A stretch of DNA of 62,886 nucleotides, counting the filler, from Octopus bimaculoides (Eukaryota): NCBI RefSeq assembly GCF_001194135.2. It is 5 parts of 4 records of this genome, joined end to end, with 100 filler letters (N's around TTAATTAATTAA, not from the genome) between each part and the next. Parts side by side here need not be neighbours in the genome. Positions count along the whole stretch, not along the records: positions 35,636 to 52,355 come from NC_068990.1; 4 more parts are not named here. One strand, given 5' to 3'. Shown in pieces: positions 5,933 to 52,455 of the stretch. Each line of letters begins with the position of its first letter. Position 1 is the stretch's first letter. The notes under the pieces are model-generated. The model saw only the letters and a program-made list of their open reading frames with translations, was not told the DNA's origin and searched no databases. The position numbers and the translations under genes were made by a program.

Positions 5933-6150
5933 TGGCGCTGAGCTGGCAGAATCGTTAGCACGTCGGGAAAAATGTTTAGTGGAATTTCTTTTGGCTTCCT
6001 ACAGTTCATATACCTCGAGGTCGACTTTGCCTTTCATCCGTTGGGGATCGATAAAGCAAGTAGTAGTTGAGTACTGGGGTCGATGTAATCGATTATTCTT
6101 CTCCCACTAATACATCTGACCTTATTCCAACATTTCAAACCATTATTGAT
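5933..6150 (+). mobile_element. SINE family B
   Basis: GGCGCTGAGCTGGCAGAATCGTTAGCACG head and collinear body. Confidence 0.85.
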
Positions 6151-6483
6151 AATCAGGAATAGTTTTCCTCGCGAAATGCTTCGGAAATAATTCGCTACTA
6201 CTGAATTAACATGAATCAGTCCTGATTCGAGCAAAGCTAAGAATATTTTGTCCGTGGAAATGAAAAGCGATATTTAATGGTCTCTGTGGAAGGGGTAGTT
6301 ATTTTTTCTTTGTTGATTAAGACATTTAGTAATTATTATTCTGTGGAGTAAATACTAGGCGCAGAGGTCAGTTAATGAGCTGGGACGGTGAGGTGGGGTC
6401 GATCTTCAGCAGAAGATGGGTATGAGAGAAGGAAGCACAATTCGGTCGGTAGTGCCGGAGTTGAGCTGGGAAAGAAACCAACC

Positions 6484-6517
<34 letters not shown>

Positions 6518-7013
6518 ATAGAAAATTGGTCAGCTCAGTCATGACGTTGGTGGGACAAGACCGACAACAGCAATAACAGTATGTGTGTGTGTAAGCAGGA
6601 TTAGTGGAGGTGACATATTAAAAGTTTCAGTGCGGATTGTATTGGCTATAGCTGTTCGAGTTATGCCGAGAGTGAAGTGCTGTGTTGTATAAATAAGAAT
6701 ATATATATATATNNNNNNNNNNNNNNNNNNNNNNNNNNNNNNNNNNNNNNNNNNNNNNNNNNNNNNNNNNNNNNNNNNNNNNNNNNNNNNNNNNNNNNNN
6801 NNNNNNNNNNNNNNNNNNNNNNNNNNNNNNNNNNNNNNNNNNNNNNNNNNNNNNNNNNNNNNNNNNNNNNNNNNNNNNNNNNNNNNNNNNNNNNNNNNNN
6901 NNNNNNNNNNNNNNNNNNNNNNNNNNNNNNNNNNNNNNNNNNNNNNNNNNNNNNNNNNNNNNNNNNNNNNNNNNNNNNNNNNNNNNNNNNNNNNNNNNNN
7001 NNNNNNNNNNNNN

Positions 7014-7066
<53 letters not shown>

Positions 7067-7759
7067 CATACATACATACATACATACATACATACATACA
7101 AACACACACATGCATATATATATATATCCACGTATAAATGGATGTGCGTGTATGTATACACGTGTATAAAGCAGTGGGTATATACAAGTATATCGTTGAA
7201 GTGTAACTTTAAACCACTCTTGTTGAGTGGTTATTTGCAAACAAGTATTGAGGTCTCAGCAGAGAGCTGGCGGGAATATAAACGGTTTTGGAGTGAAAGT
7301 AAATACGAGCGTGGAACACAGCCAGGAGCAGATGGAAACAGGAACCAATAAGGGTAGCAGACGGGGTGGAAGAGACGAAGAGGTAGCCGGCCAGGAAGTA
7401 GATATGCAAGAGTTTTGTTGCTGTTGTTGTTGTTGAGATGGAGGTGGCTGCCGTCGTCGTTGTGGTACTTTAGATCCACATTAATTCCAATAGAAGAGAC
7501 CAATGATTTGAATATTCCAGCCACGTTTCTCCAATCTTTTAATTCAGATGTGTTTTCTTTTTACCATGTTGGGCAAATCCCATCCCATGCTTTCTTCCTA
7601 TTCTTCACATGGCAACGGTGTGTAATTTGAAAGATAATTTAGTTGCTATTTCTAGCATGCTTGCGAGCATATCCATAGGCTTCTTCAGTAATCTATAAGG
7701 AAGTGGTTCTTGAGTCGCTTTCGTTGTTGTTGATGATGATGATGATGATGAGGATGATG

Positions 7760-35535: not shown

Positions 35536-35649
35536 NNNNNNNNNNNNNNNNNNNNNNNNNNNNNNNNNNNNNNNNNNNNTTAATTAATTAANNNNNNNNN
35601 NNNNNNNNNNNNNNNNNNNNNNNNNNNNNNNNNNNATATTGTGAATATA

Positions 35650-36431
35650 TATATAATAGCGTGAAATGCATATCTTTGATGCAGCCTTGACCAATAGTAT
35701 CCCTAGGAGGGGTTAGGTCTAGATCCAGATTAGTCACTGCCTTTCAGAGGGTTCTGAGCCCCCTTTCGCTAGGTTAGCTAAGGATTAGGTTAAGGCTTAG
35801 TTGTGATCCGAACATAACCTCTTCTAACACAGAGGATCGGGAGTCCTTTTGGGTGTTCTATTTTCCTTGCTGGAAAGTGGGGTTAGTTGATGGGGGTGGT
35901 GGTTTCAAAAGGGCCAGCATGTGCAACCTGATCACCTTTGCCGATCAAACTCCCAACCCATGCGTTCCCGTTGCGACACAGATTCTACAGAACTGGGTTG
36001 GGTGTGAAAACCAACTTTAAAGTATAAATATAGATTTTTTGAATCAGCAACGTTATGTTCGGTTAAGTCCTATTTGGGTGAAAAGTCAATAAACTGATTC
36101 CTTATGGGGTTTTCTATTCAATCAGGATGAAAAATCGATAAACCGATTCCTTATAGGATTTCTCACTAAAATTGGCTACACCCCATTTTCAACCATTACT
36201 TTTACCTATTTTGATGTATTTTGTTCAAACTTATGACTCATGGGATCTTTGAATGCTTTAAGTTCTCCTCCCCCACCACAAAAAAAAAAACAATCGATGA
36301 GTGGAAAAATTGATAAACCGATTCTTTATAGGATTTCCCAATCAAATTGTCTGCAACCCACTTTCAGCCCAACGTTCACCAATTTCAACTGATTTTGCTC
36401 AAATTTGACGTCAGTGTTATTTAGTTTGGTT
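35650..36431. mobile_element. Probable non-autonomous DNA element with internal motif repeats
   Basis: The GATAAACCGATTCCTTATAGGATTT motif recurs at about 36088, 36137 and 36312; degenerate TTAGG-like tract near 35770-35800; no ORF. Confidence 0.3.
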
Positions 36432-36876
36432 NNNNNNNNNNNNNNNNNNNNNNNNNNNNNNNNNNNNNNNNNNNNNNNNNNNNNNNNNNNNNNNNNNNNN
36501 NNNNNNNNNNNNNNNNNNNNNNNNNNNNNNNNNNNNNNNNNNNNNNNNNNNNNNNNNNNNNNNNNNNNNNNNNNNNNNNNNNNNNNNNNNNNNNNNNNNN
36601 NNNNNNNNNNNNNNNNNNNNNNNNNNNNNNNNNNNNNNNNNNNNNNNNNNNNNNNNNNNNNNNNNNNNNNNNNNNNNNNNNNNNNNNNNNNNNNNNNNNN
36701 NNNNNNNNNNNNNNNNNNNNNNNNNNNNNNNNNNNNNNNNNNNNNNNNNNNNNNNNNNNNNNNNNNNNNNNNNNNNNNNNNNNNNNNNNNNNNNNNNNNN
36801 NNNNNNNNNNNNNNNNNNNNNNNNNNNNNNNNNNNNNNNNNNNNNNNNNNNNNNNNNNNNNNNNNNNNNNNNNNNN

Positions 36877-36928
<52 letters not shown>

Positions 36929-37009
36929 ACACCACACCACACCACACATAGATGAGTTTCTTTCAGTTTCTGTCAACCAAATCCACTCCCAAGGCTTTGG
37001 TAGGCCCGA

Positions 37010-37560
37010 GGCCTTAGTAGAAATGCGTCTGCTGATGTCTCCTCCGTCGATGTTCCAGGCTTCTGCTTCAGGAGATCCCCATGCAGCGCTCGCGCTTTCT
37101 CGCAGCTGATGGTCTCCGTCATCGTATCCCCTGCGAGTTGCTTACGGCCTTGATCTCGTACTTGCTCGTCAGGATGGTGCAGATCGTCGATGCTTCGGCT
37201 GTATTGATGCGCTATGCCCACTACACGCACACCTCTCTTATGTTTATCAGCGATTTCCTTCTTCAATTCTATCGTAATCAGCTTTTTCTTCTTGGTACTG
37301 TGCTTTGCACTAACCTTCTTAGGACCCATGGCTAACACAACTAATTATTATAGAATAATAACAAAAGCGCACAAATCCAAAAAGGAAACACTGGGAAAAA
37401 CACAATAGGGATGCTGCTACAATGAGATAAATATGTGAACTGAACAGGTGAAGGCTGCGCTCGTTGGGAGAGCGTGTGCAAACACAGCGCCAACTAGCGG
37501 TCGGTTGTATGAAAATCGCTCGTGCTGGGGATTTGCGCTCGTATTACAAGACAAAAATTC
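37010..37560 (-). mobile_element. pogo/Tigger transposon, internally deleted 5' remnant
   Basis: MGPKKVSAK..KKKLITIELKKEIADKHKRGVRVV (CENP-B/psq-type HTH) joined to LAGDTMTETISCEKARALHGDLLKQ (second HTH). Confidence 0.88.
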
Positions 37561-38939
37561 GCGCGCGCACACACACACACATACATACGCACTCATGCAT
37601 AATATATGTGTGTATTTGTGCATTTAAATATATATATGTATATTTATGCATGTATGCATGTGTATGTACGTCTGTGTGTATGATTGTGTATGTATATATG
37701 CGTGAATACCTGTACATGTGTGTGTGTGCATGCATATGTATATAATGTAGGTGTAGTTGAAGTGTCAACAACTGTATTTGTTTTCTCAATTTGGCTGCCT
37801 ACATTGCTGTGTTAAACGTACCTATGGCAATCTCATGCTATCCACTGCATCATTAATTTGTCAAAACATGAAACATTTGTTTGTGCAGTTACACTGCACT
37901 TTAACATGTAATCAGATGTCGTCAAACTCCCGCCACGACGCCGAAGCTGGGTATATCATCTTCATAGGTTTTATGCTGTGCAAAGCATACGTTGGCCTGC
38001 TTCCTAGAAACACACTGTTGATATTCCCAAATGTTTGCCCAGACGTGTTACAACAACAAGAACAAGGGTGAAAAAATACAGAGAAAACAATTACAATGTT
38101 CATAAGAGTATCATACCTGTTTGTGCGAAAATGTAAATTTTCTTTGACTCTCTTTCTCTGTACATATATATATATATANNNNNNNNNNNNNNNNNNNNNN
38201 NNNNNNNNNNNNNNNNNNNNNNNNNNNNNNNNNNNNNNNNNNNNNNNNNNNNNNNNNNNNNNNNNNNNNNNNNNNNNNNNNNNNNNNNNNNNNNNNNNNN
38301 NNNNNNNNNNNNNNNNNNNNNNNNNNNNNNNNNNNNNNNNNNNNNNNNNNNNNNNNNNNNNNNNNNNNNNNNNNNNNNNNNNNNNNNNNNNNNNNNNNNN
38401 NNNNNNNNNNNNNNNNNNNNNNNNNNNNNNNNNNNNNNNNNNNNNNNNNNNNNNNNNNNNNNNNNNNNNNNNNNNNNNNNNNNNNNNNNNNNNNNNNNNN
38501 NNNNNNNNNNNNNNNNNNNNNNNNNNNNNNNNNNNNNNNNNNNNNNNNNNNNNNNNNNNNNNNNNNNNNNNNNNNNNNNNNNNNNNNNNNNNNNNNNNNN
38601 NNNNNNNNNNNNNNNNNNNNNNNNNNNNNNNNNNNNNNNNNNNNNNNNNNNNNNNNNNNNNNNNNNNNNNNNNNNNNNNNNNNNNNNNNNNNNNNNNNNN
38701 NNNNNNNNNNNNNNNNNNNNNNNNNNNNNNNNNNNNNNNNNNNNNNNNNNNNNNNNNNNNNNNNNNNNNNNNNNNNNNNNNNNNNNNNNNNNNNNNNNNN
38801 NNNNNNNNNNNNNNNNNNNNNNNNNNNNNNNNNNNNNNNNNNNNNNNNNNNNNNNNNNNNNNNNNNNNNNNNNNNNNNNNNNNNNNNNNNNNNNNNNNNN
38901 NNNNNNNNNNNNNNNNNNNNNNNNNNNNNNNNNNNNNNN

Positions 38940-38998
<59 letters not shown>

Positions 38999-39249
38999 GA
39001 GCCTGCACTAGCCTCGTGCTTATTTACCACTTAGTAGAACTGAAACACCTTACTCAAAAATACAATGCGTCGCCTCGTCCAGGAATCGAACCTACAGTTT
39101 TATGGTTTTGAATTTATTGCCCTAACGTGTTGAACATGTGTCCCCGTAATATAGTTAAGAGTTAATTAAAAAAAACGTAAGTCGCGTTCACACACAATAA
39201 ATGAACAACTCTTTCTATTAGAGGTACAAGGCCTAAAGTTTTAGATACG

Positions 39250-39420
39250 GAACTTGTCGATTACTTCGGCCTCAGTGCTCAACAAGAACTTATTGTATCG
39301 TCCACGAAAGTATGAAAGGCAGAATCTACTTCAATGGCATTGGATACAGGACATAAAGACGGATAAAATACTGCGACGCATTTTTTCCGGAGTACTAACG
39401 ATACTGCAAGTAATTCATTT
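39250..39420 (-). mobile_element. Old SINE family B copy
   Basis: Reverse complement resembles the B head and body (CTTGCAGTATCGTTAGTACTCCGGAAAAAATGCGT..CGTCTTTATGTCCTG). Confidence 0.65.
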
Positions 39421-39429
39421 TACACCCGC

Positions 39430-41000
39430 TTCAGGTTCCGTTATTAATTTTGATCCGAGTACCCCAACGATCTCAACTACATTTCCAATTACTTTGCACC
39501 CAGGTACAGGAAATTGTCAGCCCCGAAAGAGTTCACGAATAACTTGAAGGTCAGAGAAGGGGTTCATGTTGCCCTGCTGGTTACAATATTGCAGTTCAAA
39601 ACCAGGTTAGTCAGTTTTTCCTCTAGCAGTCTATCTCTTACGTAATCCACACAGTCGGACGCTATATAATCACTAATCTTCAATTGATCTTTTCCTGCAG
39701 TATATTGAAAGTATTCGTTTATTTCGTCCATCAGCTGGTCGTTCGTTAAATTATTTAAATACAATAAACCCTCGTGTGCTCCCTGGAGATGTGCTCCACC
39801 GCACACTTTCCACTCTCTTTTATTTGGGGTACACTTTTTGTTTTGAGGAGTATCTTTCTTTTTCATTTACTCTTCTGCTTTCAACAATCTATCGTTGTTC
39901 ACTGCTCATCTCCTACTCATTGTCACCAGGCGATGAGGTGCCGCTGCTGCTGCTGATGATGATTATAACCAACCTCTTGAACATCGATTTCTAGATCTAG
40001 TTGAGACGATCCGTTCTGTTATTTATAGAGACTCGACCAGTTTTGCTCTGGATTGCGGCTGCTGGTTTCTTCTGTGTTTTAAGCGTCTTTTTCTACCAGA
40101 CAGAAAGTCCTTAATTAACCCTCATTGCCCCTCGATTTGGTCAGAACACCCAACAACACAAACCACATGTCACTCGCCTCAATTTCTATATCTGAGAGTG
40201 CCCGTTAGCATCTCTGGTGTCGAACTGGACAAGAAATCTTCCATATTAGGTGAGAAATGATGCAGACAGTTCATTGCTTTGTCCTATGATTTTTACCAAC
40301 AATCTCTCACCTGGCTGTTTCACACAATGGGAGTCCATTACCATACAATCAATCCATTGCTACTTTCTTCGTTTTCTTTCAGTTTACGCAATAGTTCTAT
40401 CAAATTTTCGCTTACTTTGTGAAGAAATGTGAACTTCAATTCGTCGTAGGGGAGATGATGGGCTTTTCACACATTTTACTTACCTTGTTATGCACTATTT
40501 TTCTTCCATAAACCCTCTGTCTTCAGTAATTTTTTAACCATGCCCACTTCATCTCTTATTCATTAACATAATGCGGTAGAGTATCGTTTTTGGCTAATGA
40601 TAGAGTCACTGAATCTTTCGGTTTTCTAGTGGATTCTTGGAACTAAGAAAAAGGTAGTATCTGACGCCTCCAGAAATGCATCCAGTGATATCCCAAGGAC
40701 TCCAACCTCCTTCAACTATTCCTGTTATATTTTTTTCCTTTTAGCTTTACCAGCCTTTCTGATCATAAAATTCTTAATTGACCTTCGCTGCCTTGAATGA
40801 TCAGTCGTACTGCACCTACTACAGGAAATAATTCTGGGTGTAATTTGGTGTCCTGTGTGAGGTCATGAAAACTTGCATATGCATTCAAAATCCCACACGA
40901 TATCATCAAAAGTTGCGTTAGCGCCAAGTGTTTAACACTATTAAGTCTATTGTTCTCATGAATTAGGGAACAAATCGTCACCAATGTCTTTTACAAAGAC
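39430..41000 (-). pseudogene. Unassigned decayed ORF, possibly retroelement ORF1/gag-like
   Basis: Protein-like stretches in shifting frames (HLALTQLLMISCG..KLHPELFPVVGAVRLII; LKEVGVLGISLDAFLE..FFLVPRI; IRDEVGMVKKLL; KVCGGAH..LLYLNNLTNDQLMDEINEYF). No diagnostic domain recognised. Confidence 0.35.
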
Positions 41001-42966
41001 CCTTGCGCCACTTCGTAAGAAATACTGTGGAATTAGTTTATAAGGAGATGTATGAAGCACTGAGAAATTAACTTTGTTTCGTTTTGAGGGTTGATATAGT
41101 ATAACAAAGAAATACCACCGGGGGCTTTTTTGTAATGAGAACAGCGTATCATTAATTTATTGATTCCTTATATTTCGGGCTGCTCACTCATCTACATAAG
41201 AAAACGGGCAATACTTCTACCGAAAATTACAAATAGTCGACATCTGATATCTGATAATGCTTTGGCTATTTTCTTTTGTAGATGAGTGAGTCACTCGACA
41301 TATAATAATTAATAAATTGTTAATTCTCCTCGTCTTGTAAAACGTTTCTTGTATTATTTATTTATTTATTTTATCATATCGCAATGTTTCAGACTAACCC
41401 TAACACTATTCTATGATAATGCCAAATGATTTACTGCACCCTATCTCTCTCCATGCGAGGGCTACTTCTGATTATAATCTGAATGTCGTAAGAAGGATCT
41501 TTGTTGATTGTTCTCTTTATTGCAGCTGCGTGACAAATACCAGTAGAATGTGTCTAATTTCCTCACCTAATACTGTTATAAGGTTTTTATCTAAATATTG
41601 AATGTTTGAACCTACAACAAGCTTGTCTGTTTGAAGTGCAGTTCTCATTTTCTATTGTTAATTTTAAATGGCAAAGCATGTGTGTGTACGCGCGCGCGCG
41701 TTTGCGTCTGTGTGTATGTTTGTGTGTGAGTCAGTGTGTGTGTGTGTGTTATTGTCAAAAAAATTTTCCTATACCACTAGTCCGGTATTTTTTATCTAGA
41801 TGAACGACGGTCTTTCAAAGTATCGATGGTTTTTACATCTAAATATAAACAAGTTACATGCTCTTTTTTGTACCTTTCATATCATCTTATAAAATGTGGT
41901 CAATGTCTCCGTTCAGCCCTCTCTCAGCACGAGTCTTCGGATTTCTCTCAACTGCTCTTGCTGTATTCTTGCAGTTTTAGTAACCGTCCTACTACAGTTT
42001 ACATTATTGGTTGTCACTGCTGAAAGTGATATTATTGACTACAGCAGTGGTAGTGGTCCGGGCGTGGCGGGACGTTGCAGTGAGAAGTGTTGTTTGGTGC
42101 TTTGATGATGCAGGACCAACTCGTTGTTGAGCGGCGGTTGTTGTTGTTGTTGTTGCGATTAATAGCAACAATAACAACAAAATGCTGTCAAAGCATCATC
42201 ATCATCATCATCATCATCAACAGCAACAACAGCAGCAGCAACAACAACACCAACAATAATAACAACAAGACCAAACGCAGCAAGCCACAAGATCAGCAAC
42301 ATTAAGCAAAGAACGACGGTATGCAAAGCAAAGAACAACGACTTCAACATCAGCATCAGCAACAACAACATTTTAACAACAGCAGCAACAGAAGCAGCAG
42401 TAAGTAGAGAAAAGAATAAGTTTTTGAGTAGTAGGATCAACGAAACTAAGAACACCGTAAACAAATATAATATAGTAGATGCAATTGCAAATGTGGCGTT
42501 GAAATGTGATGCTGTCTGCTGTATTATTGTATTAAACAGAACTCAGTCATGTGAAATTAAAGTGGTTGTAACATCAACGATGGCGTGTATAGGGTAAACA
42601 AGAGAGAAATGAGTGGGGATCCTTAAACAGCAAGTCACTTGTTTTGCAACTAACTCAGTATTAAATAAAACATACTAAAAATTGTCGAGCACTTACAAGA
42701 CAGAAATATTGGCTTGGTTCGTACCTCAATATAACAAAACGGACGAAAATAAACCTGAAATAATTTCAATACTGGCTGGAAACCGAAATTCTAATAACAA
42801 TTAGTATCATACTCTACAGAACTGTATGGAGAAGATTATTTCAAAATCTACGGTGTGACGGCAAGCGGAGCCACGGCTGCAAAGAGACAATCAAAGTATA
42901 ATGTGTCAGATTACCAAAAGAAATTTGCACATACACACACACGCACACATACGTGCATATATATGA

Positions 42967-43034
<68 letters not shown>

Positions 43035-44379
43035 GAATACGCATACATGCATAAATAGAATATGCGTGTATATGTATATATATGTATATACATACACACA
43101 CACATGTATATGTCATATATCTGTATATATATATTTGTACGTTTGTATATACATAATATATATACATATATATATATATATTTCCACATATATATTTATG
43201 TATTTACATCCATACATACGTACATACGTTCATACATTCTTACATACACATATATAATTATATAATAAGCATAGCGAAGATGGTAGCTGTGTACATTGGA
43301 AACTGTGCCAAAACTACGAATAAGCATATAAAACAGATGGTTTAACCAAATAGTTCTCACTGTGCCTGGCTATGACTTAGCCACCCACAAATACTGACAC
43401 AAAGATAGAAATAAATGGTAGTGGTGCTGGTTAAAGTTTGGTTTATCTTTACCTCCTAATAATAATTTTTATCATCTTTGAGTATCATTTGAAACTGAAG
43501 GGAAGAGTGGAGAAAGAAGTTCAAATTTCTATTAGATCTCGTAAAAAGATTTAAGGCAACATTATTTAATGTGTCCTCCATTTTTAAAGCCGGTACAGTG
43601 TAATCTAACTGAAGTTTGGTTCCTATTTCTAGCACGTTCGCAGAGCACCAAAAGGCTGTTGTTGGTTCATGGTTATAAAGTTGGAGAAAATATAAACATG
43701 TCTGCTGTGGAATGAGATGATTGGGCGCAGCTGTTTTGACATTGAACCTATTTTGGTGACATTGTGGTTTGGGTCTGGAGGCAAACGCGCGCGCACAGAA
43801 ATAGACACATGCAGAAAGAAAGCGAGAGAGAGAGAGAAATAGGGAGAAAGAGACATTACACATACATACAAATATAACTAGATGCTCATAAGGAGAGAGA
43901 GAGAGGGGGGAGTGTGAAACATTAAAAACTCTGATGTTAGATAAATCAGCGTCGAATCAGCGACGCCAAATAAGTGGTGTGGGAACGGTTGTGTAAAGAC
44001 ATCTCATACTCTGTCCGCCACATTACGTTTCCGTTGCCAATTATGCCATTCTCCTTTTGATTATTTATCTCTTCCTTCATAAGATTCTGTGTTGTGAATA
44101 ATACCCAAGACGGGTTTGCTTAGACGACTTAATCTTTACCCTAGATTACAAAGCCAATTGTAACAATTAGAAAGGGATAACAGAGATCTTTTAGAAATAT
44201 AAATCACATATAGAATATAAATCATGTGCATACCAATTCCTGGTCTCATAAGTGCTTTGAATGGAAACTGATCTATTGCAAGCGTTCATACTCCTGCTAA
44301 TTGTTTACCGTGACGCAACGACGCATTTATACACAGTACATCCCGTCCCTGATGCAAAAAAGAATAATACTAAATCTGC

Positions 44380-44720
44380 AAGCTATTTCTCTCTCCAGAT
44401 ACTTTATATCTTAGAGATATACAGATCATATTCCTATTCCTCTTCGAGAGACAAATCTCTCATTCTTTAACCTCCGCTGTCCAGGCTACACTCAACTTAA
44501 ACTTCACTTTGAAAGTGGGGAGTCAGTAAATGCGTAGTTGCGACTCACCTCATCACTCACCTCTCATCTGGATATTACAATCAAGACTTCCACTTATTCT
44601 GACTCAGCGTCCACATTCCTCTAACTACATCAGCTTCCTCTACCACTCCCTAAATTCCTCCATCCGACAACTGCCTCATTGAAATTATCTTCCACACGAT
44701 CGCATACTACACAACTTCCG
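44380..44720 (+). mobile_element. Possible Penelope-like RT remnant, very decayed
   Basis: Motif order LYLRDIQIIF (cf. LYxRYIDDIF), LNFTLK (cf. LxFTxE), HLDITIKTS, NYISF across frameshifts. Confidence 0.3.
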
Positions 44721-45602
44721 CATCTTACGGACCACATTGCTACTTAACTGATCAGAGTTTCGTTATTATTGGCACCAACATATTCTTTACCTCTGACCTA
44801 TCAAATAACAAGTAGATGGGCGGCTAAAACCAACCTCTTAGCCACCCCATAAGTGACCAAATCACGTAGATCCATGTTTCCCAAGTTGTTTGCTCGTAGT
44901 TGTAGTCTTTCAGCTAAACAAAATGACCAGAAATGCTTGAGAACAGGAAAATCAGCAACTCCTTCCAATTGGAAGGTTTTTAGCAAGTACCTGGACTGTT
45001 GAAAATAGCGCGATGAATGCCTCGCACCTTGTGTCACATAAATACACGTTCGCCTCTAAAATGATCCTTTTGGCCCTCTGTGGAATTCTCTGTTTCTCCC
45101 TTTTCCAACATAGCAGTTCTATAACTACGGCTTAGGTGGGAAAATCCTCCATATTTGTTTTGCATCCAACTAGACAAGACAGAAAAATGGCTTCATTCAA
45201 ACAACTCTCTTTAAAACTCTCACACAAACATATCTCAAATCTGGATATAAGTGTATGTGACAGGGAAGCCGGGAAAGAAAAGGGGAGAACAAAAGGAGAG
45301 AGAGAGTGGGAGACAGAAAGTGGGTGACAGAGAGAATGAGAGAGAGAGAGAGAGTGTGTGTGTATGTGTGAGCTCGCCCGGGTATGTCTATTTGTTTTGA
45401 CTTTATTTCCCATCATGGTCAAATTGGACCTGTCGATTTATCAATCATCTCCTTTAACAGCATCACCTTCTTACTTTGGATACCTTTAAAGGAGTCCATT
45501 CTATTGCATGCTTTAGGCGAGGTTTCCTATCAATCTCGGATGGCCCTTTAACTGATTATAAGAACTAACTTCACTCCTGATTAAAGACTGAAAAATATGT
45601 AT

Positions 45603-45788
45603 CTTTTACTTGTTTCAGTTATTAGACTACTACTATACTGGGGTACCACCTTGGAAAAGTTTTAGTCGAATGAATCGACCCCTGTAATATTTTAAAGCTT
45701 AGTACTTAGTCTATCGGAATCTCTTGCCGAACCGCTAAGTTACGGGGGCGTAATCACATCAACATCGGTTGTCAAGCTGTGGTTGAGA

Positions 45789-45795
<7 letters not shown>
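45603..45795 (-). mobile_element. SINE family A 3' half
   Basis: Reverse complement of the A tail (CTTTTACTTGTTTCAGT..GCCGAACCGCTAAGTTACGGGG). Confidence 0.85.
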
Positions 45796-45875
<80 letters not shown>

Positions 45876-45968
45876 AAACACACACACGCACGTACACACA
45901 CATACAAACATACATACATACATACATATATACATACATACATACATATGTATAAATAATAATAAATA

Positions 45969-46372
45969 AGGCGCAGGAGTGGCTCTGTGGTAAGTAGCTT
46001 GCTTAACAATCACATGGTTCCGGGTTCATTCGCACTGCGTGGCATCTTGGGCAAGTGTCTTCTACTATAGCCTCGAGCCGACCAAAGCCTTGTGAGTGGA
46101 TTTGGTAGACGGAAACTGAAAGAAGCCCGTCGTATATATGTATATATATATATGTGTGTGTGTGTGTGTTTGTCTCCCTAGCATTGCTTGACAACCGATG
46201 CTGGTGTGTTTATGTCCTCGTCACCTAGCAGTTCGGCAAAAGAGACCGATAGAATAAGTACTATTCTTACAAAGAATAAGTCCCGGGGTCGATTTGCTCG
46301 ACTAAAGGTGGTGCTCCAGCATGGCCGCAGTCAAATGACTGAAACAAGTCAGGGTAAAAGAGTAAAAGAGTA
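45969..46372 (+). mobile_element. Full-length SINE family A
   Basis: A-box-like TGGCTCTGTGG, B-box-like GGTTCATTCGC, internal (TA)n(TG)n, tail CCAGCATGGCCGCAGTCAAATGACTGAAACAAGT. Confidence 0.95.
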
Positions 46373-46428
46373 AGGGACAAAAGAAAATTTTTCTTTGCCA
46401 ATATAGTGAAAAATAGAGTATAGATCGT

Positions 46429-46800
46429 TTAACCATGTTCTCTCCAGCGGTCTTTATCCTTCATCATCGCTGCCATGCCCTGTGTCTCCCAGAGACAAGT
46501 GTCTGTCCTTAGGACATCAACATGTGTCATCCTCGGTCTCTCTCATTCGTGTAGGGGAACCCACAGGAGCACTGAGTGCAGTATCAAGTCTGAATGACGG
46601 TAAACATGTCCAGCTAACCTCAGTCTCCTCTGTGTTATTTTCGAGCTAACTATTGGGAAGTTCTCGTACAGCTCAGTGTATATTGATTAATGTTCAGAGC
46701 CATCCTCAGCATTCTCGTGTAGCACCCATCCACCATCTGAGTGATTTACTTGGTCAGTGTCCAAGTCTAGATCGTACAATAGCACAAACCCCACTGCAGC
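46429..46800 (-). mobile_element. RTE-X LINE 3' segment (C-terminus), opposite in orientation to the adjacent 5' segment
   Basis: Minus strand across frameshifts: AAVGFVLLY, TWTLTK..VDGCYTRMLRMALNI, ELY..KITQRRLRLAGHVYRH..VLLWVP..RPRMTHVDVLRTDT..MKDKDRWR. Confidence 0.9.
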
Positions 46801-46802
46801 AA

Positions 46803-49488
46803 CGGGTATGACAATAAACTACTTCCAGTTCAGGAGCTGTGGGGAATGTAGAGTTACCCCATAGTTCTCATCACTCCCAGGTCTGAAATTGAAATTGAAA
46901 AGAACCATGAAGAGTGTACTTGATAGCATGAGGATTAGAGCCTCTAACTACACTGTCAAGGAGCAGCCCGATCGTTACAACTCTGCTGGTTTAGAGCCAT
47001 AGGGAAGGCCAGTGGATGATTGACCAGCAATTTCTGTGACAAATATATAGAAAACACTTGATCTGCAGAGGAACCACAAAAATCGACACTCTGAATGTGA
47101 GGACTGTTCGGACGCTCGAGAAGAGAGGGGAGTTGAGTCATCTGTTTGAGTAAGACTGGTATGCAGATACTTGCGATCCAAGAACACAGCATCCTACACG
47201 ATGAGTCCGTGAAGAGAGTGATGATTGGGAAGAAAAGCCAGCTCATCACCACATCAGCAGTGAGAAACACGGCTGGTGCTGCAGTAGGAGGGGTGGGTTT
47301 TGTGTACAGTGTAAGAGCCAATCTGTTAGTGAGGGAAATCACACGTTTCCCGCGAGTGTTGAAGGTGACCTTCAATGGAAACCCAAGGCTGACACTCATC
47401 TCAGCCTATAGTCCAACCGAGGGGGACAGTGATGCGAGTGCGGAGGAGTTCCATGAGGGAGTGTGTAAAACTGTCAACACCATACCAGCTCATAACATCT
47501 TGCTTGTTCTAGGTGACCTCAAAAATACATCTGAGCAAGGAAAGTGGTGAAGATCCTTGCTGGTACTTCCATAACAATACCAACCGAAATGGGTGACTAC
47601 TGAGGAACATCCTGGTGGAGGTGAACTTAATGGCAACCAGCTCAATGTTTTCAAGAATCCGAGGAAAATGTGGGCCTGCATTTCTGATACGCACCTGTCG
47701 AAGTCCCATTTTGATTTCATTCTAGTGAGGAAGAAGTAGCGGAGTAGTGTTCTAAACACAGAACCATACAACGATTTCAGTACACTGGGAAGTGACCACC
47801 GGCTTGTTATGAGTAACGTCCGGGTGAGCTTAAGAAAGAGTAAGGTTCAACCCCGGAGAGCAATCTATGACTGGAGAGCTTTCAAGGAAGGTAAGTTACA
47901 GTAGAAGTGAGGAAGAGGTTCAGTGCTCTGTGTGGAGAGGCAGAGGAGAGGGAGATTAGAGAGACTGAGGAGAGAGTGACGAGAACGTACGGGTACTTCA
48001 TCAAAGCAGTGGCAGAAACAAGTGAGGTCCTGGAGCCGAGGAGAGAGAAGAAGAGGAGAAACGTCAGCTTTGCAGACCCAAAAGTGTGTGCCGCTAGCGA
48101 ACATCTGAAAGCTGCCAAGGACCAATTCCTTGCTGATCCTACGGAGGGGAGGAAGGAGAATGTGGAGGTTATGAAAGAAGAGCTCTGTACCGCTTGCACT
48201 GAGGCTAGAGAGGAAGTACTGATGGAGAAGATCAGAAGTGTGGAGAGAGCGGTTGACGGGTCTAGGTGTAAAGAAAGCTGGACAATCATCAACGAGATCA
48301 CAAGGTAGAGGAGGGAGTTCAAGTTAGATCCAGGAAACAGAACCCGAGGAAAGGAAGAGTAGATGGCTGGACTATTTTAAGACCCTATTAGGAGAGTTGC
48401 CTTCCACAACCCAGAACGCTGGGGAGATCAGGCAACTGTTTGAGGAACTGGATACTGAGACAGGACTCTTCGCCAAAGCGGAGTTTCAGAGAGCCACGAA
48501 GATCAAAGAGGGAAAGGCCTATGGAGAAGATGGAGTAGCACCAGAGGTGATGAGAGGTGTGATTTTGAGGATATCGTCCTGGAGTTCTGTAACTAGACAC
48601 TGGGAAAAGGAGTTGCTCCGAGTCAGTGACATCGTCCCAGTGCCAAAGAAGGGAGATCTCTCTAACATCAACAACTACAGGGGGATTTCACTGATATCAC
48701 TCGTAGTAAAGACCTTCAACAGGATGATTCTTAACAGGATCCAGCCTGTGAAGGAGAAGAAGCTCAGAGACAACCAGAACGGCATCAGAGAGGAGGGAGG
48801 ATCAACCACCAATCACATCCTAATGCTGAGGAGAATATTAGAAGGCGCTAGAGCAAAGAGTCTTCCTCCTGTTATGGTTTTCATTGACTTTAGGAAGGCC
48901 TTTGATTCTGTGGACCGTCACTGCGAGATGAAGATCTTACAGGCTTATAGAATCCCCAAGAAGATAGTAGACCTGATATCACTGCTCTACACCAACACCA
49001 AAACCCAAACCATTACACTTGATGGGATGATGAAGTTCTTTGAGATACTGGCTGGAGTGCTTAGGGAGATACATTGGCTCCCTACCTTTTTATCATCGTG
49101 GTGGACTATTGTATGCGCCTTGTTTTGGAGAAACACCAGAACTCTGGCTTTACTGTAGCGCCGGCTCAGAGCAGGTGGGTCAAGGCTAAAAAGATATCAG
49201 ATGTTGAATTTGATGACCACAAAATTCCAGTGACAAACACAATGAAGGAGGCAGAGGAGTTGATGCAGGAGGTAGAGACTGTGTTGATGAGAGTGGAGCT
49301 GAAAATGAATGAAATTAAGACGAAGTATCTGGTAGAGAACATTAAGAAACCAGAGAAGATTATGAATGTAGACGGGAAGCCACTGGAGTTGGTTGAGGAC
49401 TTCCTGTGTCTGGAGTAAAGATTGAGAACACAGAGGGTAATATAGTTGAGAGGAAGAGCAAAGTCTGGGCGGCATGCCACAGTTTGAG

Positions 49489-49496
<8 letters not shown>
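46803..49496 (+). mobile_element. RTE-X LINE 5' segment: 5' leader, APE endonuclease and RT (decayed)
   Basis: IDTLNVRT, ILAIQEH, ITTSAVRN..GGVG, FNGNPRLTLISAYSPT, LLVLGD (APE); IVPVPKKGDLSNINNYRGISL, DNQNGIR, FIDFRKAFDSV, APYLFIIVVDY, EFDDH (RT); ends KSKVWAACHSLRSI. Many stops and frameshifts. Confidence 0.95.
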
Positions 49497-49525
<29 letters not shown>

Positions 49526-49533
49526 CACACACA

Positions 49534-49629
<96 letters not shown>

Positions 49630-49640
49630 TACACACATAT
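49490..49640. repeat. (ATCT)n then (AC)n microsatellite at the RTE-X breakpoint
   Basis: Directly visible. Confidence 0.97.
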
Positions 49641-50151
49641 ATATGCCTTTTTAAATAAGAAAATGAAAATAATTGGATAAAAATTTACGTACCGAAGAGT
49701 ACCAAAGACATTCCTTACGTACCAAAGAGTACCAAAGACATTCAAATTCATACATAGAAACTCCTACCTACAGCTGTTTCCATACCCAATTTTTTAATTT
49801 CAGAAATAAAATTCCATATTCGAAACCAGTGAATTGGGTATATCCTCAGGGAGAATTTCTAAAGGATGTCATTTAACAGCGTATAGGCTAACCCACAACA
49901 AATTCAGAAGTGTGTGCTTTTTTCTGAACGCAAGTGTTCCATAGAAACCGTCAGTATTACATATATACAAAAATAAACACATTCAACACATCTTTGCTTG
50001 TGCCAATATGATACACTATAGTCCATTGACGGTGTTATGATAGTTAAGATAAGGACATTATCGAGAGAAAAAGAATGGTAGATAAAACTAGTGAATGGGG
50101 GAAAACGTTATTTATCAATTGTTAAGGAGAGAGCAGCTGAACATGTATGTA

Positions 50152-51205
50152 CTTACTGTTAACAAAAGTCAGGATGCGTGACGTTCAGTTACTCAATAAA
50201 TGAAAAATGCATTAAATACTGAAAAATGTACACGAAGGCCAGACGCAGAAGGATCCTAATTTTTCTTCAATTATCAACCGAAATGTTAATACACAGTTTC
50301 ATGTCTTTAATGGTAAGACTGAGAACTTCGCATTGACGAAGACGGAATAAATACGGCTTTTCGGCCAAACAGACGCGAGTGGTGGGTAACGCCTGAAAGA
50401 AATTCCGAATGGATACAGAAAGAGAAATAGCAAGAAAGGAAATAGATATTGACCGGCAAGCTAAGCGTTCGGTGCCGAAAAGCAGAGAGGTGAGAAAATT
50501 AGCCACGGGTCACGTGAGCAGTAGATAGAGGGAAAGGAGGATGAGAGAGAGCGCGGCAGAGAGTACAAGGAAGGAAGGAAGAAAGTCTGCAATTACGAGT
50601 AAGAGGATGATAGAGAGGAAGAGAGGAAGTTGGGATGCTAGAAAAGAAATGAGGACGAGAGAGAAAGGAAGAAGATAGAGTCGCAAAAAATATATAAAAC
50701 CTTACTGTTAATAAAAGTCGGGATGCGTGATGTTCAGTTACTCAATAAATGAAAAATGTATTAAATACTGAAACGCGTGTACGTAGAACAGACACAAAAG
50801 GACCCTAATTCTTCTTTAGTTATCAACCGAAATGTTAATACACGGTTACATGCCTTTGATGATAAGATTGAGAACTTCGCATATCGGCGGCACTCGCAAA
50901 ATTTGCGGAGAATTAGGGCTCGAGCAAACAAAACGATACAGAGTGGACGTACGAAAGTAAACAAATGTAATTTAAAACAATTGACGAAAACGGAATAAAT
51001 ACGGCCTTTCGGCCAAACATACTAGAGTGATGGGTAACGCCTGAAAGAAAAGCTGAATGGATATAGAAAGAGATATAGCAAGAAAGGAGATAAATATTGA
51101 CCGGCAAGCTAAGCGTCAGGTGCCGAAAGGCAGAGAGGTGAGAAAATTAGTCACATATGGGCAGAAGATAGAGGAGAAGGAGGATGAGAAAGGAGAGAGA
51201 GAGAA
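50152..51205. repeat. Diverged tandem duplication, unit about 550 bp
   Basis: Copies start CTTACTGTTAA.AAAAGTC.GGATGCGTGA at 50152 and 50701 and stay collinear; the second copy has an extra stretch of about 98 bp (50882-50979). Confidence 0.92.
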
Positions 51206-51212
51206 AGTGGCA

Positions 51213-51245
<33 letters not shown>

Positions 51246-51284
51246 GCGTGTATCTATGTATGTATATGTATATATACATGTACA

Positions 51285-51442
51285 CAACGGACTTCTTTGA
51301 GTTATCGTCGTCTAAATTCACTCGCTTTGGTCGGCCCGAGCTATAGTAGAAGAGACTTGCCCAAGGTGCCTTGCAGGGAGACTGAACCCGTACCCATGTG
51401 GTTGGGAAGCAAGCTTCTTATCACACAGCCACACTTGCACCT
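51285..51442 (-). mobile_element. SINE family A 5' half
   Basis: Reverse complement of the A head. Confidence 0.88.
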
Positions 51443-51460
51443 ATGTAGATGAACATATAT

Positions 51461-51510
<50 letters not shown>

Positions 51511-51669
51511 GTGTGTGTGTGTGTGTGAATTTAGTAAAAATGGCACAGTAAGCATGATTTCCGCCAGAACTTTGAAATGTACATAAGGACAGCTTGATGA
51601 ACTTTGGGACGTACATTGGGACAGTTTGATGAGCTTTGGAACGTACATCAAGCTGTCCCAATGACACTT

Positions 51670-51928
51670 TGTAACACCAAAGGTGAATTGAAGGCAAGGA
51701 TTGTAGCAGCATTCACCAACTTAAACAAGAAGACCGTCCAGAAGAGTTGCTGGAGATTCTGAAGTTGCCTAGAGGCCGTAGTTGAAGCCAATGGCAATTT
51801 TATTGAATAAATTTACTCTTTAGTATTTCAAAATATTTTTAGATAATTTTGGTAAATATATCTCTTAAAATGAGATGTCGGTGTCATTTTCATTTTTGCG
51901 TAACTTAGACGACAATTTATTCACCCTG
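51670..51928 (+). mobile_element. Tc1/mariner-superfamily 3' end with TIR
   Basis: CNTKGELKARIVAAFTNLNKKTVQKSCWRF*SCLEAVVEANGNFIE* (cf. RxxAVxxxxGxxxE); terminal ..TTCACCCTG followed by TA. Confidence 0.8.
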
Positions 51929-52455
51929 TATATTGTCAGATCGGTCTTGGGCGCTACAGGTAATATGTAGTCCAGTACAACCTGTTGCATAGTCGGATCG
52001 TTGGCAACTAAACAGGCAACCTCATCAAGCTTACTTGGTGAGGAGGGTGATTGCTGAACACCCTACAGGGCGAAAAATAAGACCTGTCAAAAGGTGGAAG
52101 AGCTCATGAGCAGTCAAAAGCTATCCAACAATATGTGTACATGTGTATGTATGCATGTGTGTATGCGACAGGACGTGAAAATATCTGGGTTAGTGTCTAG
52201 GTGCGTGGTTGGCTCACTAGGAGTGGGAGGCACCTCTGTTGTTGAGCATAGAACGGGGCTCACCACTTCGAGCTGGGAAATGAATGGAATGCTTGGTGTG
52301 TGCCTTGCTGTGGCTACTGACTCTTTAAAAAAATGGGGAATAGGGCTGGATATATNNNNNNNNNNNNNNNNNNNNNNNNNNNNNNNNNNNNNNNNNNNNT
52401 TAATTAATTAANNNNNNNNNNNNNNNNNNNNNNNNNNNNNNNNNNNNNNNNNNNN

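What the first reader, a model, noticed from the sequence alone, without database searches (positions are those of the whole stretch)
46429..49496. Near-full-length RTE-X LINE with twin-priming-like 5' inversion
Seen: the C-terminal 370 bp lie on the minus strand (46429-46800), back-to-back with the plus-strand 5' leader, APE and RT (46803-49496). The plus segment stops at ACHSLRSI and the minus segment resumes at AAVGFVLLY; by the RTE-X consensus only about 15 codons are missing. At the outer breakpoint the LINE's own AGATCTATCT merges into a (ATCT)n tract, giving primer microhomology. Known: flank - inverted 5' part - 3' part, with a small deletion and microhomology, is the twin-priming signature of mammalian L1 and is not generally described for RTE-group LINEs. 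Inference: twin priming by a non-L1 LINE, primed from a (GATA)n overhang. I found no TSD, so a later inversion or a misassembly remains possible.
Basis: partly seen in the sequence, partly recalled or inferred. Interest (0 to 1): 0.8.

Follow-up and report, generated by a model that had tools for sequence, protein, structure and literature searches.

The report
Octopus RTE LINE with inverted 5' part
One old, decayed copy of an RTE-type jumping gene in an octopus-like genome has its first 2.7 kb flipped relative to its last 0.4 kb, the pattern that "twin priming" leaves on mammalian L1 elements, so this way of inserting may not be limited to L1, but one locus without a target-site duplication cannot prove it.

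Summary
One RTE-clade LINE copy is split into a plus-strand part (46804-49492: 5' leader, ORF start, APE, RT) and a minus-strand part (46406-46805: C-terminal ORF end plus a TATAT tail).

- **Contiguity.** Against a collinear Octopus bimaculoides copy (L001), the two parts are adjacent in element coordinates, with only about 35 nt (about 12 codons) missing.
- **5' end.** The plus part starts within about 1-9 nt of the family's 5' terminus.
- **Junctions.** The inner junction is direct, with a 2-nt GG overlap. The outer junction shares 4 nt (ATCT) with an (ATCT)9(AC)56 tract.
- **Age.** Both parts carry the same load of private substitutions (5.4-6.8% against 5.9%).

This topology is what twin priming predicts, and it is hard to get from two independent insertions. 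A later inversion is also unlikely, because it would need a breakpoint at the element's very 5' end.

Three weaknesses remain. There is no target-site duplication, the last 16 nt of the 3' end align poorly, and no reads or orthologous empty site could be checked. In the searchable literature, 5' inversion is essentially an L1 phenomenon.

Verdict: a probable twin-priming-like event in a non-L1 LINE. It is a single, old locus of moderate interest.

The parts
45971..46375 (+). Octopus-type SINE copy with an internal (TA)n(TG)n and a (GTAAAAGA)n tail. It is neighbouring sequence, not part of the LINE.
   Evidence: 84.5% identical to a SINE copy in O. bimaculoides locus L001, 12180-12528.
46376..46400 (.). 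Short unique flank. In the LINE's own orientation it lies 3' of the element.
   Evidence: No similarity to any RTE copy or to the SINE. It contains no copy of the right-hand flank, so there is no TSD.
46401..46405 (-). TATAT: putative remnant of the (TA)n 3' tail, or target microhomology for first-strand priming.
   Evidence: The closest copy, L001, ends ...TTGCCC followed by (TA)16 at the equivalent spacing. Other family members end directly in short tandem repeats (TAAG, TAAAG, TTGAT).
46406..46805 (-). RTE 3' segment: C-terminal part of the ORF, about aa 752-893 of the intact relative's ORF. It carries stops, frameshifts and small deletions.
   Evidence: blastn to L001 6841-7232 at 80%; tblastn to L008 orfB 765-882; three-way alignment. 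The last 16 nt (46406-46421) align only weakly.
46804..46805 (.). Inner junction: the 5' end of the inverted part meets the 5' end of the direct part. GG could belong to either part.
   Evidence: Read directly against L001, L006 and L008. There are no filler nucleotides.
46804..49492 (+). RTE 5' segment, inverted relative to the 3' segment. It holds the 5' leader (46804-46907), ORF ATG (46908), APE (about 47076-47810) and RT (about 48640-49350). It ends 35 nt before the point where the minus segment resumes.
   Evidence: blastn to L006 at 81% over 46894-49051, to L001 at 85.7% over 48691-49492 and to L008 at 75.5% over 46894-49487. Pfam RVT_1. At least 6 frame changes and several stops.
49489..49492 (.). 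Outer junction: the ATCT is shared by the element (consensus AGATCT|GTATGG) and the microsatellite.
49489..49637 (+). (ATCT)9 followed by (AC)56: the flank that abuts the internal breakpoint. Its complementary strand, ending (AGAT)n-3', is the proposed second primer.
   Evidence: Tandem Repeats Finder.

Best explanation
A single retrotransposition of one RTE-clade LINE RNA was resolved by a twin-priming-like route.

**Proposed steps (inferred).**
1. The plus-strand end at about 46400-46405 (...TTTGCCAATATA-3') primed cDNA synthesis on the RNA's 3' end, which carries a (UA)n tail. About 400 nt were copied.
2. The other broken end, whose minus strand terminates in (AGAT)n-3', annealed by 4 nt to an internal AUCU about 35 nt further upstream on the same RNA. 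It was extended almost to the RNA's 5' end (2.69 kb).
3. The two cDNA 3' ends were joined at a GG microhomology.

**Result.** Flank, then the inverted 5' part, then the direct 3' part with its tail, then flank. Thirty-five nucleotides were lost at the inversion point, and there is no recognisable target-site duplication.

**Shown versus inferred.** Shown: the topology, the contiguity, the equal age of the two parts and the junction sequences. Inferred: the order of events and the identity of the primers.

The copy is old and dead, with about 6% private substitutions and many frameshifts and stops.
For: 1. **Contiguity.** In the collinear copy L001, window 48691-49492 (+) maps to 5998-6798 and window 46801-46437 (-) maps to 6841-7232. 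A base-level reading leaves 35 nt missing.
2. **Orientation and order.** The internal breakpoint of the inverted part faces the flank, and both 5'-most ends meet in the middle. This is the order the twin-priming model gives (PMC2912911).
3. **5' end.** The inverted part begins at GGGTATGACA. Independent copies (L006, L008, and metagenome contigs L048 and L055) stop being alike only 4-9 nt upstream of that motif.
4. **Equal age.** Window-private substitutions are 6.8% and 5.4% in the plus part and 5.9% in the minus part (Fisher p about 0.8).
5. **Microhomology.** There are 4 nt at the outer junction and 2 nt at the inner junction, with no filler.
6. **3' end.** The 3' segment ends at the right spacing in TATAT, and its closest relative ends in (TA)16.
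7. **Strand composition.** It flips at 46800, as expected.
Against: - **No TSD.** RTE-clade inserts usually have TSDs of 7-15 bp (PMC4245944 and PMC6007223), and L1 inversions mostly have TSDs of 10-20 bp. If the second primer were a TSD overhang of (AGAT)n, that repeat should follow the 3' tail. It does not.
- **Weak 3' end.** The last 16 nt of the 3' segment match the closest copy at only about 9 of 16 positions, so an intact 3' terminus is not proven.
- **Uncertain right flank.** It is 150 nt of microsatellite. The same piece has N gaps at other microsatellites, so what lies beyond (AC)56 is less certain.
- **Single locus.** None of the 8 other distinct copies I fetched shows an inversion. 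No reads and no orthologous site could be examined.
Confidence: 0.6

Rival explanations
1. Post-insertion DNA inversion. An ordinary full-length minus-strand RTE copy later suffered two breaks, one inside the ORF and one at its 5' end. The 2.69-kb piece was re-ligated in reverse with loss of 35 nt.
For: It gives the same final arrangement. AGATCT at the internal breakpoint is a palindrome next to (ATCT)n, so end joining could use the same 4-nt microhomology. The absence of a TSD does not discriminate between the models. Other copies show later rearrangements: L006 has a foldback insertion and a 3' truncation, and L001 has an internal deletion.
Against: It needs a breakpoint within the first few nt of a 3.3-kb element, about 10 in 3300 by chance. 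If the break lay inside the element, the leftover 5'-terminal bases (reverse complement of ...TAGTCCT) should sit next to (ATCT)n. They do not. No inverted repeats longer than the 4-nt match flank the breakpoints.
Confidence: 0.15
2. Two independent insertions of the same family. A 5'-truncated minus-strand copy and a full-length plus-strand copy landed head to head, and the plus copy later lost its 3' 0.6 kb to a deletion or microsatellite event.
For: 5'-truncated RTE copies are the norm. Nested and adjacent TE fragments are common in this repeat-rich region, for example the two SINE copies in opposite orientation at 45601-46375. L006 shows that 3'-truncated copies exist.
Against: The two breakpoints lie 35 nt apart in element coordinates, about 2% by chance. 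The fragments abut with no intervening flank. Private divergence is equal. No 3' tail or TSD of a second element is present.
Confidence: 0.07
3. Assembly artefact. The contig joins pieces of different RTE copies, or is mis-joined across the microsatellite.
For: The piece comes from a scaffolded assembly with N gaps (36432-36876 and 38179-38939) next to microsatellites. Full-length octopus LINEs are reported as hard to assemble from short reads (PMC9115989).
Against: The inner junction shares only 2 nt between the joined sequences, so a k-mer or overlap assembler has nothing to mis-join on. The element-to-(ATCT)n transition lies within ordinary read length. There are no Ns between 38940 and 52355. 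A mis-join inside (AC)56 would change only the distal flank, not the inverted structure.
Confidence: 0.1

Closest known systems
Twin-primed (5'-inverted) L1 insertions of mammals (Ostertag and Kazazian 2001; model as drawn in PMC2912911)
   Same: Both have a direct 3' part with its tail and an inverted upstream part. The two parts are contiguous in element coordinates, with a small loss at the inversion point. The outer junction and the cDNA-cDNA junction both show microhomology.
   Different: The element is an RTE-clade LINE in a mollusc, not L1. Its tail is a short tandem repeat, not poly(A). No TSD is present, whereas most L1 inversions have TSDs of 10-20 bp (PMC4245944). The inverted part runs almost to the 5' terminus.
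RTE-clade LINEs of Octopus (RTE-2_OV and the O. bimaculoides RTE in PMC9115989; 13 recently active RTE families in O. vulgaris in PMC13282606)
   Same: It has a single APE+RT ORF, is about 3.3 kb long with minimal UTRs, and ends in a microsatellite-like 3' end. Its closest DNA copies are in O. bimaculoides (81-86% identity).
   Different: This copy is dead, with about 6% private decay, and is rearranged. I could not compare it with the published RTE-2_OV sequence or with Repbase RTE-X entries.
The single 5'-inverted insert of zebrafish Nimb-2_DR seen in chicken DT40 cells (PMC4245944)
   Same: It is a 5' inversion produced by a non-L1 LINE.
   Different: That was an experimental de novo event of an I/Nimb-type element. 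This is a genomic fossil of an RTE element in an invertebrate.

Membership tests
RTE-clade non-LTR retrotransposon | One long ORF encoding an N-terminal APE-type endonuclease followed by a reverse transcriptase | tested here: met
   Window RT: Pfam RVT_1, E=8.5e-24. The window APE region is below Pfam threshold but is 55-80% identical to the APE of the near-intact relative L008. L008 itself hits Exo_endo_phos_2 (32 bits, cutoff 27.4) and RVT_1.
RTE-clade non-LTR retrotransposon | Compact size (about 3.2-3.3 kb) with very short UTRs | tested here: met
   L008 is about 3.3 kb from the GGGTATGACA leader to its tail. The 5' leader is about 210 nt and there is no 3' UTR, because the stop codon lies in the tail repeat. 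The window composite is about 3.1 kb plus small internal deletions.
RTE-clade non-LTR retrotransposon | 3' end is a short tandem (microsatellite-like) repeat, not poly(A) | tested here: met
   Family copies end in (TAAG)n, (TAAAG)n, (TTGAT)n-like repeats or (TA)16. The window has TATAT. The feature is as listed for RTEs in PMC6007223.
   No Repbase or Dfam reference set was available. The only indirect support is that sources name homologues 'craniofacial development protein 2-like', and that octopus RTE LINEs are described in the literature.
Twin-primed 5'-inverted LINE insertion | The two parts of one element lie in opposite orientation, with the 3' part carrying the element's 3' end and tail | tested here: met
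   Searches show the orientation. Evidence for the 3' terminus and tail is plausible but weak over the last 16 nt.
Twin-primed 5'-inverted LINE insertion | The parts are contiguous in element coordinates, with only a small deletion or duplication at the inversion point | tested here: met
   35 nt are missing relative to L001, and the same position is found in L008, L002 and L005.
Twin-primed 5'-inverted LINE insertion | Microhomology between the target end and the internal priming site, and between the two cDNA ends | tested here: met
   ATCT (4 nt) at 49489-49492 and GG (2 nt) at 46804-46805.
Twin-primed 5'-inverted LINE insertion | One TSD flanking the whole composite | tested here: not met
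   There is no adjacent direct repeat. The best matches are unrelated 8-mers. The (AGAT)n expected from the primer is absent after the 3' tail.
Twin-primed 5'-inverted LINE insertion | Both parts derive from one event (same age and subfamily) | tested here: met
   Private substitutions are 5.4-6.8% in the plus part and 5.9% in the minus part, with Fisher p=0.78-0.82. The untrimmed 3' end looked older (9.8%), but that came from the poorly aligned terminal columns.
Twin-primed 5'-inverted LINE insertion | An empty pre-insertion site in a relative, and junctions confirmed by reads | not testable with these tools
   No eukaryotic genome DNA search and no read data were available. The window's own proteins are not in the protein collection.

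The most novel reading that the evidence does not exclude
RTE-clade LINEs in a mollusc can complete integration by twin priming. If so, using the second target end as a primer on the same RNA is a general property of APE-type target-primed reverse transcription. It would not be a peculiarity of L1 ORF2p with mammalian host factors, and it could happen without a long TSD overhang.
Probability: 0.55. Interest if true: 0.5.

Novelty: new member of a known kind. Interest (0 to 1): 0.4.

Why it matters
Experimental work reports 5' inversions almost only for human L1 in human cells, and has proposed that long (10-20 nt) overhangs and host factors are required (PMC4245944). A well-documented RTE example in an invertebrate would show that the twin-priming route is available to a distant LINE clade in a distant host. 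It would also justify a genome-wide survey that could test the overhang-length idea, since RTE TSDs are typically 7-15 bp.

There is a practical point too. Such composites are easily annotated as two unrelated fragments, which inflates insertion counts and hides near-full-length copies. A single fossil locus is only a lead.

Tried and rejected
- **TSD search.** I ran local alignment of the left flank (46331-46410) against the right flank (49486-49760), direct and inverted. Only non-adjacent 8-mers turned up.
- **Paralogous empty site.** I tested whether both flanks belong to one older repeat. The flanks match no repeat in the roughly 110 kb of related DNA I held.
- **Closer subfamily copies to fix the 3' end.**
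  - The third protein search, with the window's C-terminal translation, found nothing.
  - L085 and L086 turned out to be only 68-72% identical.
  - L009 is the same locus as L008.
- **Metagenome scan for the 5'-terminal motif.** Of 75 hits, only L048 and L055 carry the leader. They moved my estimate of the true 5' terminus to 4-9 nt upstream of the window's GGG.
- **Self-cleaving ribozyme at the 5' leader.**
  - The idea came from crossing complementarity: GGGTA...TACCC and TGACA...TGTCA.
  - Rfam at a permissive threshold found none.
  - The second pairing is not kept in L048 or in the window, so I dropped the idea.
- **Apparent older age of the minus part (9.8% private changes).** It disappeared once the badly aligned terminal columns were trimmed.
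- **Source of the window.** Its RT ORF is absent from the protein collection; the best hit is 65% identical. No orthologous or source contig could be fetched.

Full report
**What is there.** The piece (35636-52355) is repeat-rich, microsatellite-rich non-coding DNA of an octopus-like genome. The closest DNA matches to its repeats are in Octopus bimaculoides GCA_001194135.2.
- *Plus-strand part.* Six-frame translation and ORF listing show a decayed LINE on the plus strand from about 46800 to 49492. It has an ORF start (ATG 46908, MKSVLDS...), APE-type endonuclease homology and a reverse transcriptase. The RT hits Pfam RVT_1 at E=8.5e-24.
- *Minus-strand part.* Immediately to its left lies the C-terminal end of the same kind of ORF (AAVGFVLLY...DRWRE).
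- *Relatives.* A near-intact relative, L008 (ENA contig, 3.9 kb), carries Exo_endo_phos_2 + RVT_1 in one ORF broken by a single frameshift. tblastn of that ORF onto the window covers residues 1-740 on the plus strand and 765-882 on the minus strand.
- *Composition.* Strand composition flips at 46800, as expected.

**Are the two parts one element?**
- *Mapping to a collinear copy.* In locus L001, window 48691-49492 (+) aligns to 5998-6798 at 85.7%. Window 46801-46437 (-) aligns to 6841-7232 at 80.1%.
- *Base-level reading.* The plus part ends in the element's ...GTTTGAGATCT, and the minus part resumes at CCGT.... The missing stretch is GTATGGACGTCGGACATTCGTAAAGACCTGAAGAT, 35 nt or about 12 codons. 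L008, L002 and L005 agree on the position.
- *Age.* I compared the window with an O. bimaculoides copy, using L008 as outgroup. The window's private substitutions are 6.8% (46894-49051) and 5.4% (48691-49492) in the plus part. They are 5.9% in the minus part once the badly aligned terminal columns are trimmed (Fisher p about 0.8). Untrimmed, the minus part looked older (9.8%); that came from the last ~40 columns.

**The ends.**
- *5' end.* The plus part begins at GGGTATGACA (46804). L006 and L008 share this leader and become unrelated just upstream of TGGGTATGACA. Two metagenome contigs with the same leader (L048, L055) share TTTAGTCCT before GGG, and L006 has TATTATCCT. The family's true terminus is therefore probably 4-9 nt upstream, and the window's copy is essentially, but not perfectly, full length at its 5' end. 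The leader also has two internal deletions.
- *Inner junction.* It reads ...CAGCAACGG|GTATGACA..., has no filler, and GG is assignable to either part.
- *3' end.* In this family the ORF runs straight into a short tandem-repeat tail: TAAG, TAAAG, TTGAT-like, or (TA)16 in L001. The window has TATAT at the equivalent spacing (46401-46405). The preceding 16 nt match L001 at only about 9 of 16 positions, so the terminus is plausible rather than proven.
- *Outer junction.* The element's AGATCT merges into (ATCT)9, followed by (AC)56. Four nucleotides are shared.

**Mechanism.**
- *Fit to the model.* In the element's own orientation the order is: flank ending (AGAT)n, inverted 5' part with its internal breakpoint outermost, direct 3' part, tail, flank. 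This matches the twin-priming model (PMC2912911). One target end primes on the RNA's 3' end and the other primes internally on the same RNA. The two cDNAs are then joined, usually with a small loss or gain at the inversion point and microhomology at the junctions.
- *Independent insertions.* These would place the two breakpoints within about 40 nt of each other only about 2% of the time. They would also need exact abutment and a later loss of the plus copy's 3' end.
- *Later inversion.* This needs one break inside the first few nucleotides of the element. If the break lay slightly inside, the leftover terminal bases should sit next to (ATCT)n, and they do not.
- *Misassembly.* The inner junction is hard to produce by misassembly because only 2 nt are shared there. 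A mis-join inside (AC)56 would change only the distal flank.

**What does not fit.**
- *No TSD.* None was found. RTE-clade inserts usually have TSDs of 7-15 bp, and L1 inversions mostly 10-20 bp (PMC4245944, PMC6007223).
- *Consequence for the primer.* If the second primer were a single-stranded TSD overhang made of (AGAT)n, that repeat should reappear after the 3' tail. The sequence there is TGGCAAAGAAAAA. The event was therefore blunt or deleting at the target, or the microsatellite has since changed.
- *No second example.* None of the other 8 distinct copies I could fetch shows an inversion, but that sample is far too small for a rate.

**Comparison with what is known.**
- *Octopus RTE LINEs.* They are described, including candidates for current activity (PMC9115989, PMC13282606).
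- *Twin priming in the literature.* Of 106 papers in the library that mention it, the 40 listed and those I opened concern L1 and mammals, or mention it only in passing. The one experimental comparison of LINE clades found 5' inversions only for human L1 in human cells, apart from a single Nimb-2_DR insert in chicken cells. It found none for ZfL2-1.
- *Classification.* The locus is best filed as a new member of a known kind: a twin-priming-type composite of a non-L1 LINE.

**Age and state.** The copy has at least six frame changes and several stops. Its private divergence of about 6% is in the range that PMC13282606 equates with roughly 18 My for O. vulgaris (JC 0.065). That is only a rough analogy.

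**Verdict.** The twin-priming reading is the best-supported explanation (about 0.6), but the TSD criterion fails and no read-level or comparative confirmation was possible. Interest is moderate, because a genome-wide survey would be needed to turn this into a finding.

Noticed in passing
window 46804-46885; L006 7032-7117; L008 441-545; L048 1749-1921: The first ~80-100 nt of the RTE 5' leader are much better conserved between distant copies (88-95%) than the coding sequence (68-81%). The leader also recurs in unrelated metagenome contigs. This points to a functional 5' module, such as a promoter or RNA element. No Rfam family matches, and a pseudoknot idea was not supported by covariation.
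   Followed up: partly
window 45601-45950 and 45971-46375: Two copies of the octopus SINE lie in opposite orientation. The left, minus-strand copy keeps only its 3' half, and its internal (TG)n(TA)n has grown into a 160-nt (AC)n(ACAT)n array.
   Followed up: partly
window 50152-50549 and 50701-51192: A direct duplication with a period of about 550-650 bp and 87% identity lies downstream of the LINE. There is also a 30-bp unit repeated twice at 49685-49743.
   Followed up: no
L006 7118-7651: The O. bimaculoides copy L006 has a ~530-bp foldback (palindromic) insertion in its 5' leader. Its arms start with the reverse complement of the adjacent RTE sequence and contain tRNA-like segments. L006 is also cut off at RT residue ~587.
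   Followed up: no
L008 and L009 (whole contigs): Two ENA assemblies from different samples (ERZ17096671, ERZ27291734) hold the same 3.9-kb contig with identical flanks. It carries a near-intact RTE with a single frameshift at 1062-1068. One version has a 7-aa duplication in the N-terminal ORF.
   Followed up: partly
protein hits P0121, P0029/P0131, P0011: The best full-length APE match is a sea-urchin protein (Diadema antillarum, 56% identity over 100% of the query). Further hits come from a ctenophore and a brittle star, and one is labelled as a Gammaproteobacteria MAG protein. The spread across phyla fits the horizontal transfer often reported for RTEs. The MAG hit is probably eukaryotic contamination.
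   Followed up: no
window 36432-36876 and 38179-38939: N gaps of unequal length sit next to (CA)n and (GA)n tracts. The assembly therefore tends to break at microsatellites, which matters for trusting the sequence beyond (AC)56 at 49525-49637.
   Followed up: no
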